Shown here: positions 29,595 to 36,330 of the stretch, piece after piece | How the letters are laid out: each line of letters starts with the position of its first letter | Position numbering within the stretch: position 1 is the stretch's first letter | NCBI GenBank assembly: GCA_964019335.1 | Contig: OZ025658.1 | Location: 372,001-436,000 of the forward strand | Reading direction: 5' to 3' | DNA from: Diplonema japonicum | Taxonomy: Eukaryota; Protista; Euglenozoa: Diplonemea | DNA: 64,000 nucleotides | Made by a program: the position numbers and the translations under genes | Notes under the pieces: generated by a model | The model's database searches: none | The model's input: the letters and a program-made list of their open reading frames with translations, nothing else | What the model was told of the DNA's origin: nothing

Positions 29595-29625
<31 letters not shown>

Positions 29626-32600
29626 TGAGATAAAGGAGGTTCCTGTTTTGGAACGTCCCCCTTGTCTCTACTTATCTACCCCTTTCTCCCTTCTGGGGCC
29701 TCGGCCTTTCTTTCTTTTTTGGCTGTGTTGCCTTCCTCAAAGTATCCTCCCTTTCTTCTTGCCACTTTCTGCCCAGTTTCTTAAGGTCCTTCTTGGTTTT
29801 CTCTGATGCAAAAACTGGCCTTCTGTTCCATCCCAGACTCTTCTTCGCACCTATGGTTCTAAGCGCGTGGTTCTTCTTGCTCTCCGCTGGGAAGATCCGC
29901 TTGCCTCTGACCTTCTTCTGTGTGCGTGCTGTGTCCCACCCTTCTTGGATTCTTTCCAGGAGGCCGTGGAAACTCCGCGCTTTCTTCTGTATCATGTCTA
30001 GATCACCCTTCTTCCCCGTGATCGGCTCGACGCCCAGCGTGTTCTCGAAGTCTAGTACGAGTTCCATTGTGGTGACTGTCGTCTTCCTCGGTCCATCGTA
30101 CCACTTCAGCTTTTTGAGCCACTTGACGATGTCTTCACCGTGCTTCATCATCAGGCTCCCGCTCACATGCTTCCTCAGCTCCTTCCATTCAGGTGGCGCA
30201 TGAGCGTTTCCTTCCGTTATCTGTTCCCAGGGGTGCGTCGTGTACGTTTCTAGCTTTCTCTTGTCCTGGAGAAGCTGGTCCCGTTTTGCCACCACTTCCA
30301 GCAGGTAGTATTGCGTCTTCCTCAGCCGGTGTTGGTGTGTTCGGTGACCACGCGGGAGCGTTCCATGTAGCTGCATGCAGATTGGCATTTCCGTCTTGTT
30401 GGCCACTACTTCTGCATGTACTTCCTTCTGTTGCACCTCCTTACACTGCATTCCCATAATGCGTGTCGCAGCATGTTGCTCTCGTCCTCCTCCGCATCGC
30501 ACGCGTCGCATGTGACCTCGTCTGTTGTTGGTCTCTTGTTCACACGCTCGTGTGTCTCGTCCCCTTCCTCTTCCGAGCTGTCCTCGCTTTCGCTCTGCTC
30601 GCCCTCTGGGGGTGGTACCCGTCTGGTGATTTTGTCCTGGTACCACGCCTTTGGGTGGGTGTAGAAAACCCCTCCCGCCACGATCCTCCGGAGGTCTCTC
30701 GCTGCCATTGCTCCTTGTGGTCCGAGTCTCATCAGCTCTCGCCACAGGTCGTTCGTGCGTGGGTCTGCGCCCCGGTCTAACCCCTCCATCGAGCGTCTTC
30801 TGTCCTGTATGTGTTCCGCACGTCCCGACCTTAGCTTTTCTCGCACTACATGTGCGAATTTGTCCTTGTTCTCAGCTAGCATTTCGGTGAACTGCCCCCA
30901 GTTTGTGCTGATCTTCGGGAGCCACCGCTTCATCGCGTTGCCTATCGGGCCCAAAGGTGTCGTTCTTGTCGGGTCTTGGTACCCTTTGGCAAGTCTCTGG
31001 CACCGCTCCCACACCTCTCCCAATTTTCGTCTCGTTCTGTATATGGCTGCTAGTGCTCTGTAGGGCGCTGCTACCTCTGGGTCGTGTGTGTGTCCACTGA
31101 ACAGGTTTGACAGCACCGCCGCTGGTGATCTTGTTCTGTACCTCGGTCCCCACAAGGCGTATGTCGCGGTTGATGTGAGCGATTTGAGGTATCCTTCCGA
31201 CGGCGGCGCGAATGCAACATCATACAGACAGCTGGGTAGCACCGTTGTTCGCAGGACTTCCGCTTTCTGCCAGAAAGAGAGCTGAGTGGTCGCGAGCCTC
31301 CGTAGCGTGTCGCCCGCCGCCCTGGCCCTGGTGTTGTCCGTCTGCGTCTGACCATCCGTGCGTATCCTCGCCCCCAGGATCTTGATCTTGTTCGTGGACC
31401 GTAGCTGCCTTCCTGCTACCTCTATCCCTGGTGCCTTCGCTCCTGCTGCGAACACTTCGGACTTCTTCGTGTTGAGCTCCATGCCAACTATGTCGCAGAA
31501 TGCGGATGCACTGTCCGTGGCTTTTTGTAGTACTTCTGCTAGTTTCGCCAACAGGTATGCGTCGTCCGCATACGACAGAGTCTCCGCTCCCGTTCGTTCC
31601 TCCACACTCCTCATCAAGACCGCTAGTAGAGCGTTGATCATGATGATGGAGATCGGGCACCCTTGCAGGATTCCGTTTGTGGTTGTGAACTCCTCGCCTA
31701 CTCCTGTCGCGTATCTGAATCTCCTTCTGAGACCCTTGTACATCCCTTCTAACGCTCTCAGGATACCTTTGTCCATTCCCATCCGTTCCATCAGCTTCAG
31801 CACCAGTTGTTGTGGAACTGTGTCAAAACACTTGGCGAAGTCTAGTGCGACACCCAACAACGGTGTCTTGTCCATCGCTGCTTCCTCTATCCTGGTGCAG
31901 ATGTCCATGAGAACGTCCTCTGTCTGGCCCTAAACCCGTGTTGAGTTTTGTGGATCCAGGATTCTTGCCATTCGAGAATATCACCAAGCCTTGTGCACGC
32001 CCATAATCTGTACACTGCCGACGTGACTGTTATGGGCCGATGCTCGAGTGGTCCTGCGTTCTTGGTCTTCGGGATAAGGGTCACCAGAGCTGTCAACGCC
32101 GACTCCGGCCATTTTCCTGTCTCCTCTACCTCATTGAGGAAAACAGCCCATGCGTCCAATATGGATACTGGTAGCCTTCGTAGCTCTGCCATCCGCCAGC
32201 CGTCTACCCCCGCTGCGCTTCTGGCCGTCTTTTTCTTCAGCACCTGCTTCAGGCGTATCCCAGTGATCGGTGTCCACACCATGTCTCTTTTTTCGATGTA
32301 CGCACCGTACTCCTTCTCGAATGTTGCGTACGCGGGCTGGGGCTTGTCTCTGTATTTCGCAAAGACATGTTCCCAATGTTCCCTCATTGTCCTGTCCAAT
32401 TCCTGCGGGTTTGCAATCGTGTCCTTTTCCATCTCCACAGTTGCTGTCCCCCGCTTGTCCTCGATTCCTTTCGCGCTGTCCACGAGCTCTTTCGTCTCTT
32501 TTCCTTGTTCGACTGAGTCAAGGTAGCTCCTGTGCCTTGCCGTGCGCTGTTCCTTCACCATCTCCCGTTCGCGTCTCTCCACCGCCTCTGACATGATCTC

Positions 32601-34159
32601 TGCATCCGCCACCATGTCCTCGATGTTGGCCTGCGTCGGGTCAATGGGTAGGCACTTCACGCGCGTGTGTTCGAGCTCCCCGTTCAGGTTGTGGATTGTG
32701 TTCACCGTAACCTTACTGAGCTGCCCTCCTCCTCTTTTCTGCAACATGTTGAGCTGCGTCTGAATGGCTCTCAGCCTGCCTCGCATTTTCTCCAGCCGTA
32801 CTTGCATGATCGACGCTGCCCCACACGAGCCAGTTGTTGTTGGTGCACATAGTTGTCTCTGTTGCGGTTGTCTCACCTTGCCGCGGCCCCTATAAGGTGC
32901 CGTGCCGACGGTCTCGTCCCCCAGAAGTATCTTCTCGCTCGCCTCAGCTAGCGCGAGGTACGCCGCCTCCGGGTCTTTTCGCATGTGTTCCCTGAAATTG
33001 CTCTCCTGGAGTGCCTTACTCCCCTCTTCTTCTGCTGGTTCCACGCCTCCTGGGATTTCTCGGGGTATCATGTATCTCTTCACAGTCTGCTGGAATCTCG
33101 CAAGTCTCAGCTCTACCGTCAGAGTCATATGGTCCGCCCCCTTTACATCCCTGCTTGTTCTGCAGCCCTGTAGCGCCTGTGCTGCGAAAGCGTTCAGGAG
33201 GATGTAGTCGATCCTCGATGCACAGTTCTTCCGAGTGAAGGTTGGCATCGGGTCTTCTCCTTTTCCCGCTGCGCATGCTCCTGCCGCATCAGTCCATCCG
33301 TTCATCAGCGCGTGATGAAGCTCATACGATCGTTTCTCGTCCGTGTTGAGGTCGCCTGCCACAATCACGGGGACGTTCCCGAGCTCCATCGCCTTCTTCC
33401 TGAGGACGTGCTGCAAGAGTCGTTCTCGTTGCCTCCTTGGTTCCTCTCCCTCCCCTGCTGGGCAGTACACGGTGATGATGTGCAGCCACATATTTTCCCC
33501 GTCTATGCTGACCCTTGTGTGTTGCCACCTACTGTTGATGTCTTGCTTAGCGTCATCCCTCTCGAGTGCTGTTCCCAGAGCTGTTCGTGGCTCGCGTACA
33601 AAAGTCGCCAGGCCTCCTCGTCTTGCGATATCTATAGATATCAGACCTTCCTTGATCCTTCCCTGTTGCGGGTCTGCCCACATAGGTCTGTATTTTCGCT
33701 TCTTGTTCTTCTCTGTCGCGGATTTCATTGCGTGTGCCACCTCTTTCTGTCCTGCTGCCGTAAGTGCAGTCTCTTGTAGGCAGATCACGTCGACGTCGAG
33801 CTGCATGACGCTTTCCAGCCTGTTCCTCAGAGACGCTACATTTGCAGTTGCGAGATGGAAAACCTGTGTCGGTGGCTTCTTGGTACTGCCTGTTTGTTCA
33901 CCCTCACTACTTAGGACTTTAAGTGTGCGGTTACCAGCCTTCTCATAGGGGGTATGGCGCCCCTGACTCGCCCCCGTCCCAGTGGTCAGGACACCCCTTC
34001 ATTCAGGGCCGGGTAGATTTCCCCGTTGTTGTAGAGTCGAAGTCTGGCCAGGTGCTGTAGCCTTCTTGTTCCGAGTACCAAGTGCCACCTTCAGCAGGTC
34101 CTCCATCTGCACTACCGTGGCCTCCGTCTTGCCCAACCAATCCATCATGTGTAGCGGCG

Positions 34160-34500
34160 CGAGTACAGCGTCGTAGTGCTGGGAATCGTAAGCAACTATA
34201 ATCGTCTGCTTCGCCCCGTCTGGCTTCGTGGCTCGCACCATTCTCTTTTTGTGGAGGATCCAGATACATGTCTGGGTTGCCCATCCTGCCGCTCCGAGGG
34301 TGTAGTAGTCCCCCCACTCTCCGTCATGCTCAATCCTTCTGAGAGAAAGGGAGTGTTTCCTTGCTTCTTTGTAAAACTCCGGGTTCGTCGCGATGTACTC
34401 TGCTGCCTGTGCGCGTACTGCTGGCGTTCCCTGCTCCTCGCGCCCTAGCAATTGCAGCGAACTGGCAATTTCCGTCCCCTTCCACTGGCATGTATCTCAT
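34160..34500 (-). pseudogene. OTU-family cysteine protease domain inside the LINE
   Basis: MRYMPVEGDGNCQFAAIA (catalytic D..C), then after a frameshift VRAQAAEYI...GEWG...IIVAYDSQHYD (catalytic H). Confidence 0.85.
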
Positions 34501-36261
34501 GAGCAGCTGTTCGGCTGTGCTTCGCAGGAGTTGCCTCTCCGTTCCCTCTGTCCTCCCGCCGCCCCTCCATGCTCCTGCGTTTCATCGCCTCACGCACGCG
34601 CGGCATACCTTGCGGCTGCATCCGTCAACCTGGCACCTAAGCTGGTACCGCTTCTTCGGCTGCTGCTTCTCGCAGCCGTCGCACCACCACCTCCCCTGCT
34701 TCTTCTCGCCCTCGTCGCGGTCTGGGTAGATGTGGGCGTGCCTGTCCGTGTCCCTCTCCCTCCGCCTTCGCTCGGTGTCCCTCGCTAGGCTCCGGCTCTT
34801 CGACTTCGACGACGCCCTCGACTTCGTCTTGGCCCTCGAGGTCGTCGTCTCCGCCGCGTATCCTGCCGTGGCCTGTTCCTCGGGCTCCACCGACATCCTC
34901 ACCCCAGACGGGGATCTCATCCTCGGCTTCGGTGATGGTGATCGTGATGCCGATTGTGTGGGGGGTGTCGTCTCCCTTGTTGACTTCCCTCCAACCTTCC
35001 GTTTCTTCTCTGTTGGCTTCCCAGAGAGCTTCTCCAGCATTGCCTTCAGTTCTTGCACTTCCTTTCTGAGAGCTACCACCTCCTGTTCGAGCATCTCTTC
35101 TTTTTTCGTAGGGCCTTGCAGTTGCTGCTGCTCCTTCTGTTGTTGTTCCCGCGTGTGCTGCTTTCCTTGTTGCTGTTGTTTTTCTTGCTGCGGGTGCTGT
35201 TGCTCAGGTGCTACCTTCCCAGCTTCGACCCACGCATTCTGCCCGTGTGTCTTCCCGTATAGCGCCAGGAACTGGCGCTTCGTGTACGTGCGCCCCGCGT
35301 ACTCTTCCGGGTCTGCGGGGTCCGTCCTCTTCTCCTCCTCCTGCTTTCGCACTGCCTTCGGCGGCGGCTTCCCTGCCTCCCACACCTCCGCCGTTCCTCC
35401 CTGCCATTTTATCTCCCCGAAACTTGGGGGTGCCTCCGCCTGCAACACAGCCACTGTGCCCCCCTGCTTCGGGATGGTGCGGATGACCACCGCTTTCCAC
35501 CCTGCTTCTTTGACAACCTCCTCGATGGTGGTTGTGTCCGCGCCCTTCGGGAGACCTCGGATGTCGTAGGTGGTCTTTCTGACAACCCCGAGGCCTTCCT
35601 TCAGGAGGTACTCCTGCACTTCCTCCCTTCTCTCGCTGACCTGCAGGCCCCATCCCTTGCCGTTCAGCGTCAGTGTCGCCGAGGGGGTGATCCGTGTCAT
35701 CACTGCCCCAAGTACGTTTTGTGCCAGCCAGTGCTGCCTTGTGGACATCCACAAGGCCCCCCTTTCCCTCCTCTCGATCTTCCAGGGACCGTCCTCGTTC
35801 CCTAGCGCGGTCCCCCCTGTTCCGGTGCCATCCAGATTAGGAAATCCATGACAGATTCCCCCTTCTTGCCTTCCCTCTCCATGTGTGGCCCTACGTGCAT
35901 TCCCGTCAGGCCCGCCTTGCCGAGAAAAGCCATCACACTCTTTCTCGGGTCTTCCTTCGCCGCTTTCCATGCCTCGTCTCCTGCCGCCCACTCAGCCATG
36001 ATGGCCCTGCAGGCGACCTCCTCCTTTGCGCCCTTCACCGGCGCCTTCTTCCTTTCCCCTCCTTTCCCGCTGGCCGCCTCCCTTGGCGCCACCAGCCGCT
36101 GCACCGTCACCGTCCCGCCACTCACCTTCTTCCCCACCCTCTCCGCCCAGTTTGGGCCCTGCCCGTCCCGGCGCGTCTGCACCGAGCTTTGCTCGGTCCC
36201 AGGGGCACCGCTTGGAGGTGCGCCGGGTTTGCTTGCTGATTGCTCTGATTGATGTTCGCTC

Positions 36262-36301
36262 ATGTTAGTTCCGCCCCCTGGATGTTAGTTCCGCCCCCTG
36301 G
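36262..36301 (-). repeat. Two perfect 20-bp tandem units at the LINE 5' end (CCAGGGGGCGGAACTAACAT), abutting the ORF1 ATG
   Basis: Plus strand atgttagttccgccccctgg occurs twice, at 36262-36281 and 36282-36301. Confidence 0.95.
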
Positions 36302-36330
36302 AAAAAAAAAAGAGAATTTTTGTTCCCTTT

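What the first reader, a model, noticed from the sequence alone, without database searches (positions are those of the whole stretch)
36240..36330. LINE 5' end looks like a trans-splice acceptor completed by its poly(T) target site
Seen: on the sense strand the junction reads TCTC-T10|CCAGGGGGCGGAACTAACATCCAGGGGGCGGAACTAACATG, where ATG is the ORF1 start. The duplicated target supplies a pyrimidine tract directly before the element's first AG. The repeat junction also forms ACTAAC-ATCCAG, a canonical branch-point-like motif followed by CAG. The 5' UTR is only ~38 nt, leaving little room for an internal promoter, and the element lies in the same orientation as all host genes. Inference: a promoterless retrotransposon that targets intergenic polypyrimidine tracts, is transcribed by the host polycistron, and is capped and released by SL trans-splicing.
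Basis: partly seen in the sequence, partly recalled or inferred. Interest (0 to 1): 0.85.

Follow-up and report, generated by a model that had tools for sequence, protein, structure and literature searches.

The report
Ribozyme-headed LINE in T-tracts
The front end of this jumping gene in a marine protist is best read as a self-cutting (hepatitis-delta-type) RNA that frees the element from long host transcripts; it is not mainly a docking site for the cell's spliced leader, although the same two letters can occasionally serve as one.

Summary
Observation confirmed. On the minus strand, T10 (36311-36302) is followed by two perfect 20-nt units (36301-36282, 36281-36262) and the ORF1 ATG (36263). 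The duplication is private to this copy: 14 other full-length copies have one unit.

The element is a young ~6.7-kb APE/RT LINE of a diplonemid. It ends in CATCTC plus a T-run and sits in T-tracts with T-tract target duplications. All 17 callable insertions point the same way as host genes.

The trans-splice reading is not supported as the main mechanism.
- The first 112 nt (36278-36167) form a complete HDV-like ribozyme fold, with 11 compensatory pairs across four sister families.
- No copy of this family carries the spliced leader (SL), and ACTAAC is not conserved.
- U2- and SL-RNA chimeras joined at G1 show a discrete RNA 5' end there.

The AG can still be used. Two sister-family retrocopies carry the SL at this site, and both are one G short, which breaks ribozyme helix P1.

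No RNA run of this organism was available, so SL use was not tested directly.

This scan had already found ribozyme-headed T-tract LINEs on other DNA of this genome.

The parts
36302..36311 (-). T10 tract directly upstream of the element: the 5' copy of the T-tract target-site duplication, preceded by TCTC.
   Evidence: All 15 full-length copies have a T-rich tract here. Paired flanks show T-tract TSDs, for example L002/L038 with TTTTTATTTTTT on both sides.
36282..36301 (-). Extra copy of the element's first 20 nt (CCA + GGGGGCGGAACTAACAT). This tandem duplication is private to this copy and carries a second P1 5' strand at 36298-36293.
   Evidence: 14 other copies have one unit. Contigs of 3 DNA runs bridge it.
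36279..36281 (-). CCA at positions -3 to -1 before ribozyme G1.
   Evidence: Between the T-run and G1 the copies have CCA (5 copies), CA (4), A, AA, AAA, CCAA (1 each) or nothing (2).
36167..36278 (-). HDV-like ribozyme fold, 112 nt. P1 is 36278-36273 with 36206-36201 (G1.U wobble). J1/2 is 36272-36228 and holds the ATG. P2 is 36227-36220 with 36174-36167. P3 is 36219-36217 with 36209-36207. L3 is UCCAAGC, 36216-36210. P1.1 is C36215/C36214 with G36199/G36200. P4 is 36197-36191 with 36187-36181. J4/2 is GCAGAC, 36180-36175, with the candidate catalytic C at 36179.
   Evidence: Weak Rfam hit to drz-agam-1 (16.9 bits, E 1.7). The nested core folds with z = -2.6. The core model finds 15 family copies and three sister families. 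In the pair count, 96.5% of cells are paired, 11 pairs change on both sides, 0 of 500 shuffles reach the observed values, and slid controls give 43-63%.
36261..36263 (-). ATG of ORF1, lying inside ribozyme junction J1/2. The ribozyme core is read as ORF1 codons.
   Evidence: In sister families C and D the ATG sits directly before P2.
29622..36301 (-). The whole LINE copy, about 6.68 kb: ORF1 region, then an APE endonuclease (ORF 33806..31887) and a reverse transcriptase (ORF 31908..30406). The 3' end is ...TTTATCTCATCTC.
   Evidence: Pfam Exo_endo_phos E 1.6e-11 and RVT_1 E 1e-18. The 3' end is identical in 30 loci. This copy lacks one base after 35811 that the contigs of the three DNA runs carry (all contig depth in X2 and X4, about half in X6) (table 4).
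29596..29621 (-). T26 run after the element's last base: element T-tail plus the 3' copy of the T-tract TSD. There is no poly(A) tail.
   Evidence: The first 3' T-runs are 2-32 nt in 30 copies. L026 and L038 show a few tail bases (TTTTA, TTAT) before the duplicated target.

Best explanation
The stretch is the 5' junction of a young APE/RT LINE that inserts, in one orientation, into T-tracts of a diplonemid's unidirectional gene arrays. The poly(T) in front of it is the duplicated target. The element's first 112 nt (36278-36167) fold into an HDV-like self-cleaving ribozyme, and its P1 helix is formed by the very first G-run. Inferred mechanism: the promoterless element is read through by the host polycistronic transcription. 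The ribozyme then cuts at or within 3 nt of the T-tract/element boundary; the best-supported register cuts between A36279 and G36278. This releases an uncapped 5'-OH element RNA, as L1TcRz does for L1Tc in Trypanosoma cruzi. The RNA's short 3' U-tail pairs with the nicked A-strand of another T-tract for target-primed reverse transcription. T-tract plus (C)AG also resembles an SL acceptor and is probably used now and then. Because the SL ends in G, SL addition after that AG would rebuild an intact P1, which the ribozyme could cut off again. Only P1-broken RNAs would keep the leader. The 20-nt duplication is a private event of this copy, probably an RT template jump at the RNA 5' end, and is not part of the family's design. 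Shown here: sequence anatomy, copy comparison, covariation, chimeras, orientation. Inferred: self-cleavage activity, read-through transcription, and the interplay with trans-splicing.
For: Anatomy and family: 15 full-length copies, each directly preceded by a T-rich tract (a pure T-run abuts the head in most; in three a few other bases intervene). At least 40 3' ends carry CATCTC + T-run. Of 29 other inspected 3' copies, 11 are 99.6-99.7% identical over 1.65 kb and the rest are 5'-truncated.

Ribozyme: Rfam drz-agam-1 aligns P2, P3, L3, P4 and J4/2. A core model finds sister families B, C and D, which also start after T-tracts with (C)A-GGGG. Across 13 distinct sequences, 27 pairs are 96.5% paired. 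Eleven pairs have compensatory changes: P1 5:77 G-C to C-G, five in P2, five in P4. No shuffle out of 500 reaches the observed values, and register slides drop to 43-63% paired. G1.U, P1.1, the L3 UCC and the J4/2 C are invariant. Third-codon positions inside the core are invariant, although P2 and P4 code for different amino acids in different families.

Discrete RNA 5' end at G1: a complete U2 snRNA (138.8 bits) is fused to G1 of a family-B copy, with the T-rich tract lying upstream of U2. An SL RNA (exon plus intron) is fused to G1 of a family-D copy. Both look like template-switch chimeras.

No SL on any family A or B copy. In families C and D, the 27 copies with GGGGCTGG have no SL. The only 2 copies with GGGCTGG are the 2 SL-joined ones.

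Orientation: 17 independent insertions are in the same direction as host genes and none is opposite, using a codon-usage caller that scored 35:0 on the window. The sense strand of the window nevertheless has 36 T-tracts against 46 A-tracts of at least 10 nt.

Precedent: L1TcRz cuts at +1 of L1Tc, is proposed to release it from polycistronic transcripts, and L1Tc mRNAs lack the SL (PMC3185411).
Against: Self-cleavage was not assayed. The Rfam score is far below the family cut-off (16.9 bits against 37), and the genome-wide RF01787 search was uninformative. The whole 118-nt 5' region has no unusual folding energy (z = -0.19). The structure was derived from these same sequences, which inflates the pair counts somewhat, and only four families supply the covariation. 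Copies keep 1-3 bases (A, CA, CCA, or A-runs) upstream of the predicted cut. A G1-started RNA does not explain this. An alternative P1 register (CCAGGGG with CCCCUGG) would explain it but loses a compensatory pair. J1/2 is long (45 nt) and holds the start codon. No RNA data of this organism could be laid, so read-through transcription and the real RNA 5' end remain unobserved.
Confidence: 0.75

Rival explanations
1. First reader's model. The element has no 5'-end device of its own. The T-tract plus the first AG form an SL trans-splice acceptor, and SL addition caps and releases the element mRNA, which is both translated and retrotransposed.
For: T10-T37 followed by (C)CAG is a good polypyrimidine/AG acceptor by sequence. 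A real acceptor 320 nt upstream (CCAG|G at 36621-36620) has the same YAG|G form and is SL-joined in a relative's RNA contig. Two sister-family retrocopies start with the SL joined within 1 nt of this AG (L075, L096). Other LINE families of this genome are SL-headed according to earlier notes of this scan. Nearly all diplonemid mRNAs carry the SL (PMC10161547).
Against: None of 15 family-A copies and none of 5 family-B copies has the SL. Thirteen of 15 keep the A that the splice would remove. The two SL-joined copies are one G short of an AG| junction, and they are 2 of 29 in their families. The ACTAAC motif is not conserved and lies on the wrong side of the AG in normal copies. A covarying ribozyme fold occupies the site. 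The U2 and SL-RNA chimeras show un-spliced RNA ends at G1.
Confidence: 0.08
2. Dual route. Ribozyme cleavage makes the retrotransposition template, while a fraction of transcripts is SL-trans-spliced at the same AG to give capped mRNA for translation. The ribozyme later removes the leader, or competes with its addition.
For: The SL ends in G (SL 3' part followed by GT 157 times in the genome against 0 for the control; SL|GATAGC junction). SL + G2... therefore rebuilds GGGGGC, an intact P1 with U at -1. The only SL-headed retrocopies are the two with a shortened G-run, that is a broken P1, against 27 intact copies without SL (1 in 406 by chance). Position -1 is A in 13 of 15 copies and in all inspected C/D copies, so each new copy regains an AG.
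Against: No RNA evidence. The one-G-short junction can equally come from a mutated, ribozyme-dead source copy, or from template switching with GG microhomology. Only two events were seen. Cap-independent translation of ribozyme-cut LINE RNAs has been proposed for L1Tc (PMC3185411), so a capped form is not required.
Confidence: 0.3
3. An internal Pol II promoter in the first ~100 nt (Pr77-like, possibly combined with the ribozyme) starts transcription at or near A(-1)/G1. The 5' end would then be a transcription start and not a processing site.
For: The 5' ends are sharp and begin with (C)A, an initiator-like YA. L1Tc's first 77 nt act both as promoter and as ribozyme (PMC3383444). A discrete end at G1 in the chimeras fits a start site as well.
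Against: A promoter does not explain the compensatory changes in P1, P2 and P4. The strict same-strand orientation with host genes is not needed by a self-transcribed element. No promoter test is possible with these tools.
Confidence: 0.15

Closest known systems
L1TcRz / Pr77 of the L1Tc-ingi LINEs of trypanosomatids (PMC3185411, PMC3383444, PMC4035085)
   Same: An HDV-like ribozyme forms the first bases of an APE-type LINE in a euglenozoan with polycistronic transcription and SL trans-splicing. It cuts at the element's first base and is proposed to free the RNA from host co-transcripts. The element RNAs lack the SL.
   Different: The fold here is 112 nt with a 45-nt J1/2 that holds the start codon, and the core lies inside ORF1 (77 nt in L1Tc). 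The best register has G1.U, whereas L1Tc has C1. The element has a T-tail and T-tract targets where L1Tc has poly(A). The closest RT relatives found were only diplonemid. Homology to Pr77 was not tested.
R2 and other ribozyme-headed non-LTR elements (R2, RTE, drz-Agam families; PMC3774820)
   Same: Self-cleavage from a host co-transcript defines the 5' end. J1/2 length varies. 5' junctions are ragged with extra bases.
   Different: R2 has a restriction-like endonuclease and a single rDNA target. This element has an APE endonuclease and lands in any T-tract of Pol II gene arrays.
snRNA-LINE chimeric retrocopies (U6/L1 type; from my own knowledge, not read here)
   Same: A full small RNA (U2, SL RNA) is fused to the LINE sequence, and the whole is inserted at a normal target. 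This fits RT template switching.
   Different: Here the switch happens at the complete 5' end of a full-length LINE RNA, so the chimeras mark the RNA's 5' terminus.
SL-headed and ribozyme-headed T-tract LINEs and SINEs noted earlier by this scan in the same genome (s1-866996, s1-867015, s1-867043, s1-859342)
   Same: T-tract targets, T-tails, host-gene orientation, HDV-like heads.
   Different: This report concerns another family (A) with sisters B-D. It adds the overlap of the cut site with an AG acceptor, the rule that only copies one G short keep the SL (the '3-G rule'), and the U2 and SL-RNA chimeras.

Membership tests
HDV-like self-cleaving ribozyme | Nested double pseudoknot: P1, P1.1, P2, P3, P4 in the canonical order | tested here: met
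   All five helices can be drawn. 96.5% of 347 cells are paired over 13 distinct sequences, against 43-63% for slid partners.
HDV-like self-cleaving ribozyme | Helices kept through compensatory changes | tested here: met
   Eleven pairs change on both sides (1 in P1, 5 in P2, 5 in P4). No shuffle of 500 reaches the observed values. Only four families contribute, and the structure was derived from them.
HDV-like self-cleaving ribozyme | G.U wobble at the base of P1 next to the scissile bond | tested here: met
   G1.U is present in 13 of 13 sequences in the best register. An alternative register starting with C-G, as in L1Tc, cannot be excluded.
HDV-like self-cleaving ribozyme | Catalytic C in J4/2, and L3 C's pairing with the two G's after P1 (P1.1) | tested here: met
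   C36179 (alignment column 106) and the UCC of L3 are invariant. P1.1 is C-G in 13 of 13 sequences.
HDV-like self-cleaving ribozyme | Score above the gathering cut-off of a curated Rfam HDV-type model | tested here: not met
   RF01787 scores 16.9 bits against a cut-off of 37, E 1.7. There is no hit for sister families at E up to 5. The Rfam models do not score P1 and do not allow a 45-nt J1/2.
HDV-like self-cleaving ribozyme | Mg2+-dependent self-cleavage giving a 5'-OH product | not testable with these tools
   This needs in vitro transcription. Indirect evidence: a discrete 5' end at G1 in the U2 and SL-RNA chimeras.
APE-type non-LTR retrotransposon (LINE) | APE endonuclease and reverse transcriptase on one strand | tested here: met
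   PF03372 E 1.6e-11 and PF00078 E 1e-18.
APE-type non-LTR retrotransposon (LINE) | Target-site duplications and 5'-truncated copies | tested here: met
   T-tract TSDs in paired flanks. Eighteen of 29 3' loci are truncated within 1.65 kb of the 3' end.
APE-type non-LTR retrotransposon (LINE) | Poly(A) or A-rich 3' tail | tested here: not met
   All 30 inspected 3' ends read CATCTC followed by T's. The element works like a LINE but has a U/T tail.
SL trans-splice acceptor | Polypyrimidine tract followed by AG | tested here: met
   A T-rich tract followed by (C)(C)AG in 13 of 15 copies.
SL trans-splice acceptor | SL-joined RNA at the AG | not testable with these tools
   No RNA run of this organism is available. 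The one RNA-like run is of a relative and has no reads on the element.
SL trans-splice acceptor | Retrocopies of the family headed by the SL | tested here: not met
   None of 15 copies and no pattern match in the genome. Sister families have 2 of 29, both one G short.
SL trans-splice acceptor | Conserved branch-point motif upstream of the AG | tested here: not met
   ACTAAC lies downstream of the AG except in this duplicated copy, and is replaced by unrelated sequence in families B-D.
L1Tc/ingi clade | Pr77 hallmark sequence and ingi-clade RT | not tested
The best RT relatives are D. papillatum LINE proteins at 33-48% identity.

The most novel reading that the evidence does not exclude
The ribozyme's scissile bond and an SL acceptor are superimposed by design. 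Each insertion regains T-tract + (C)A + G1. SL addition after that AG restores G1 through the leader's own last G. One transcript could then be first a capped, translatable SL-mRNA and later, after self-cleavage removes the leader, the uncapped template for reverse transcription. Loss of one G in P1 would lock the leader on, and this would be the birth route of the SL-headed LINE families of this genome.
Probability: 0.2. Interest if true: 0.8.

Novelty: new variant of a known kind. Interest (0 to 1): 0.5.

Why it matters
Ribozyme-headed LINEs are known from animals and trypanosomatids. I found no paper reporting them for diplonemids; the D. papillatum genome paper (PMC10161547) does not contain the word ribozyme. 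This family shows how a promoterless element can live inside polycistronic, trans-spliced gene arrays. It lands only in sense-strand T-tracts, and it leaves a T-tract both before itself and before the next host gene. It also carries its own RNA-cutting head. The overlap of the cut site with a usable SL acceptor gives a concrete, testable link between the two kinds of LINE heads seen in this genome, ribozyme and spliced leader. So does the observation that only P1-broken copies keep the leader. The strict sense orientation, despite equally common A-tracts, points to selection or to a transcription-coupled step in target choice.

Tried and rejected
- Genome-wide search with Rfam RF01787 gave one irrelevant sub-threshold hit, and the control genomes also matched.
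- L016, an 86%-identical fragment, is a decayed 5' remnant without the P2 3' strand. It was not used for covariation.
- Purine skew proved a poor strand caller (74% correct on the window) and was dropped in favour of a codon-usage score.
- A simple longest-ORF caller left 27 of 45 flanks ambiguous.
Orientation therefore rests on 1.5-kb flanks.
- RNA test of SL addition: no RNA run of this organism was found. The RNA-like run of a relative has no reads on the element.
- A first regular expression for the fold found nothing.
- The multiple alignment of 3' loci was swamped by the flanks of truncated copies. Only the identity figures were used.
- TSD as the source of the CCA/CA bases was rejected, because the 3' flanks after the T-run do not repeat them.
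- TCTC as an obligatory part of the target was rejected. CTC precedes the T-run in only 4 of 15 copies, which is enriched and fits pairing with the element's own ...CUC-U tail, but it is not required.
- The exons of the small upstream host gene were read separately by eye.
Full report
**What is in the sequence.** Read on the minus strand, the window shows ...AAAAATTCTC, ten T (36311-36302), then CCAGGGGGCGGAACTAACAT twice (36301-36282 and 36281-36262). The ATG follows at 36263-36261 and opens a 153-aa ORF. Downstream on the same strand lie an Exo_endo_phos (APE) domain and an RVT_1 domain. The copy ends ...TTTATCTCATCTC at 29622, followed by 26 T. The stretch is therefore the 5' junction of a ~6.68-kb non-LTR retrotransposon. 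Every host ORF of at least 250 aa in the window is on the minus strand; the plus-strand ORFs in that list lie within or overlap minus-strand ORFs. Contigs of three DNA runs from two studies bridge flank, T10 and both 20-nt units without a difference, so the duplication is real.

**The organism.** Earlier notes of this scan call the genome Diplonema japonicum. I did not verify the species. Three results fit a diplonemid. The 38-nt leader found here, ACCAACGATTCTAAAGCTACAGTTTCTGTACTTTATTG, has its 3' part followed by GT 157 times in the genome, against 0 for the control. The best relatives of the RT are LINE proteins of D. papillatum at 33-48% identity. D. papillatum has unidirectional gene arrays and SL on essentially all mRNAs (PMC10161547).

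**The family.**
- The genome holds 15 full-length 5' ends of this family (A), 99-100% identical over the 130 nt compared.
- Fourteen have a single 20-nt unit, so the tandem duplication is private to the window copy.
- All 15 are preceded by a T-rich tract (T-runs of 4-37).
- At least 40 3' ends were scored out of 333 first-look candidates. All 30 inspected read CATCTC followed by T's, never A's.
- Eleven of 29 other 3' loci are 99.6-99.7% identical over 1.65 kb. The rest are 5'-truncated within that distance.
- Paired flanks show that the duplicated target is the T-tract itself. In L002/L038, TTTTTATTTTTT stands on both sides. In L013/L026 a T-run of 16 or more stands on both sides.
- A few tail bases (TTAT, TTTTA) lie between CATCTC and the duplicated target. 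The RNA therefore seems to carry a short U-rich tail that can pair with the nicked A-strand.
- CTC precedes the T-run in 4 of 15 copies, including this one. That fits extra pairing with the element's ...CUC end but is not required.

**Orientation.** I trained a codon-usage strand caller on the window's host ORFs. With each chunk's own ORFs left out of training, it called 35 of the window's 1.5-kb chunks correctly and none wrongly. On the 1.5-kb flanks of family-A insertions it gave 28 'same', 3 weak 'opposite' and 14 ambiguous calls. Counting only confident calls (score 25 or more) and each insertion once, 17 insertions lie in the host genes' direction and none lies against it. The sense strand of the window has 36 T-tracts and 46 A-tracts of at least 10 nt. 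The supply of T-tracts alone would therefore predict roughly half of the insertions to be antisense.

**What the 5' end is.** A permissive Rfam scan gave a weak match to the HDV-like ribozyme drz-agam-1 at 36237-36167 (16.9 bits, E 1.7). It aligned P2 (CCCGGCGC/GCGCCGGG), P3 (ACC/GGU), L3 (UCCAAGC), P4 and J4/2. The score alone means little. However, the strand that should form P1 (GCCCCU, 36206-36201) is complementary to the element's first G-run (GGGGGC, 36278-36273) with a G.U wobble at its base. The two G's that follow can pair with the CC of L3 to form P1.1.

I built a covariance model of the nested core only and searched the genome. It returned the 15 family copies and three sister families:
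- B: GGGGGCGGTATTATCATG...
- C: GGGGCTGGTAATTTGGG...
- D: GGGGCTGGATATTGGG...

Apart from three snRNA- or SL-headed copies described below (L063, L075, L079) and a few 5'-altered ones (L065, L076, L092), their copies begin after T-rich tracts with (C)A + GGGG.

On an alignment of 13 distinct sequences, the full double-pseudoknot gave the following:
- 96.5% of 347 cells are paired.
- Eleven of 27 pairs change on both sides: P1 pair 5:77 goes from G-C to C-G, and there are five such pairs in P2 and five in P4.
- No shuffle of 500 reaches the observed values.
- Moving the 3' partners by 1-3 columns gives 43-63% paired.
- G1.U, P1.1, the UCC of L3 and the C of J4/2 (36179) never vary.

The core lies inside ORF1. 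P2 and P4 code for different residues in different families, while third-codon positions of the P3/L3/P1 strand are invariant. That speaks for an RNA constraint. The nested core folds better than shuffles (z = -2.6); the whole 118-nt region does not (z = -0.19).

I conclude that the first 112 nt (36278-36167) are an HDV-like ribozyme fold. Activity is inferred and was not shown.

- The AG is A(-1)/G(+1) of the predicted scissile bond: A36279/G36278, and again A36299/G36298 in the extra unit.
- ACTAAC lies 11-16 nt downstream of G1 in J1/2. It comes to lie before an AG only through this copy's duplication, at a distance of 6 nt, and it is not conserved in families B-D.
- The short 5' UTR is explained because the start codon sits inside the ribozyme's J1/2.

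**Independent signs of a discrete RNA 5' end at G1.** One family-B copy is preceded by a complete U2 snRNA (138.8 bits), seven bases, and then G1. The T-rich tract lies upstream of the U2 part. One family-D copy is preceded by an SL RNA, exon plus about 87 nt of intron, then TA and G1. These look like template-switch chimeras made when the RT reached the end of the element RNA. They argue against templates that run on into upstream host sequence.

**Is the AG ever used for trans-splicing?** No RNA run of this organism could be found; the holders are DNA runs. One RNA-like run of a relative has no reads on the element. It does show what a real acceptor looks like 320 nt upstream: the SL is joined after CCAG at 36621-36620.

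The genomic record gives an indirect answer.
- No copy of family A or B carries the SL.
- In families C and D, 27 copies read GGGGCTGG and none has the SL. Exactly two copies read GGGCTGG. These are the two that start with the SL: L075 (38 nt) and L096 (37 nt, lacking the leader's first A), both ...TTTATTG-GGCTGG.
- By chance this association is 1 in 406.
- The SL ends in G. SL addition after the AG would therefore recreate GGGG(G)C, an intact P1 with U at -1, which the ribozyme could cut off again. With one G fewer, P1 is out of register.

So either a ribozyme-dead source copy was matured by trans-splicing, or only P1-broken spliced RNAs keep the leader. Either way the AG behind a T-tract can serve as acceptor, and ribozyme and leader compete for the same site. 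I rate regular use of this route at about 0.3, and its use as the main route at under 0.1.

**What remains unexplained.**
- A ribozyme-cut RNA should begin with G1. Yet 13 of 15 family-A copies and all inspected C/D copies have A at -1. Most often the bases are CCA or CA, and sometimes A-runs of up to 7.
- The 3' flanks do not repeat these bases, so they are not target duplication.
- They may be bases added by the RT.
- Alternatively the cut may lie at the T-tract/CCA boundary, in a register (CCAGGGG with CCCCUGG) that starts with C-G as L1TcRz does (PMC3185411). That register loses the compensatory pair 5:77 and is a mismatch shorter in families C and D.
- The private 20-nt duplication repeats CCA as well. 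This fits an RT jump from the RNA's 5' end onto a short second template, but the mechanism is open.
- The cause of the strict sense orientation is also open. It could be selection or a transcription-coupled step.

**Comparison with what is known.** The closest case is L1Tc of Trypanosoma cruzi. Its first 77 nt are an HDV-like ribozyme that cuts at +1 and is proposed to release the RNA from polycistronic transcripts, and its mRNAs lack SL and cap (PMC3185411, PMC3383444). R2 and other animal LINEs use the same device (PMC3774820). The differences here are a T-tail with T-tract targets where L1Tc has poly(A), a 45-nt J1/2 containing the start codon, a core inside ORF1, and the overlap of the cut site with an AG acceptor. 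In the papers searched I found no report of ribozyme-headed LINEs in diplonemids, nor of such an overlap. This scan has already reported ribozyme-headed, T-tract-dwelling LINEs and SINEs and SL-headed LINEs on other DNA of this genome. I reached the ribozyme lead before reading those notes, and they agree with it.

**Verdict.** The T-tract targeting and the sense orientation are real. The trans-splice mechanism is not the element's main design. The feature is a new variant of a known kind, a ribozyme-headed LINE, with an interesting and testable side link to spliced-leader addition.

Noticed in passing
window 36619-36331, minus strand: A small host gene lies directly upstream of the LINE. In a relative's RNA contig the SL is joined after AG 36621-36620. 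Exon 1 runs to 36496, a 39-nt GT..AG intron spans 36495-36457, and exon 2 runs from 36456. Read by eye, the exons give ATG 36564 to TAG 36333-36331, about 64 codons. The LINE's T10 target starts 19 nt after the stop codon. The exons were not joined for any search.
   Followed up: partly
L063:1253-1452 (G000 C82:395031-395230): A complete U2 snRNA (Rfam 138.8 bits) is fused through 7 bases to G1 of a family-B LINE copy, with the T-rich tract upstream of U2. This is an snRNA-LINE template-switch chimera.
   Followed up: partly
L079:1487-1611 (G000 C2:150558-150682): The SL exon followed by GT and about 87 nt of apparent SL RNA intron, then TA and G1 of a family-D LINE copy. This is an SL-RNA-LINE chimera, distinct from the two copies headed by the spliced leader alone.
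   Followed up: partly
L075 (G000 C30, about 604170-604260, minus) and L096/L099 (G000 C27, about 396650-396800): The only two family C/D copies with a three-G head (GGGCTGG) are the only two that begin with the spliced leader. The 27 four-G copies have none.
   Followed up: yes
window 38345-37475, minus strand: A high-copy element of about 870 bp (tens of times the unique depth in DNA runs) with inverted ends built from repeated CACGGTAACC...TTTTTCCAC motifs. It looks like a foldback/MITE-type DNA element. Many internal deletion variants appear in the read contigs.
   Followed up: no
window 35811, also 35236, 35815, 35900: The window's LINE copy lacks one base after 35811 that the contigs of the three DNA runs carry (all contig depth in X2 and X4, about half in X6), and it differs from them at three substitutions. 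This probably explains why ORF1 stops at 35802 and overlaps the next ORF.
   Followed up: partly
window, whole minus (sense) strand: Homopolymer tracts of at least 10 nt are very frequent between genes: 36 T-tracts and 46 A-tracts in 64 kb. Part of them are probably tails and target duplications of retroposons.
   Followed up: no
window 33806-34700, minus strand: Another first-stage note places an OTU-type protease between ORF1 and the APE domain of this LINE. My Pfam scan of the 469-aa and 150-aa ORFs there found no domain above cut-off. I did not look further.
   Followed up: no
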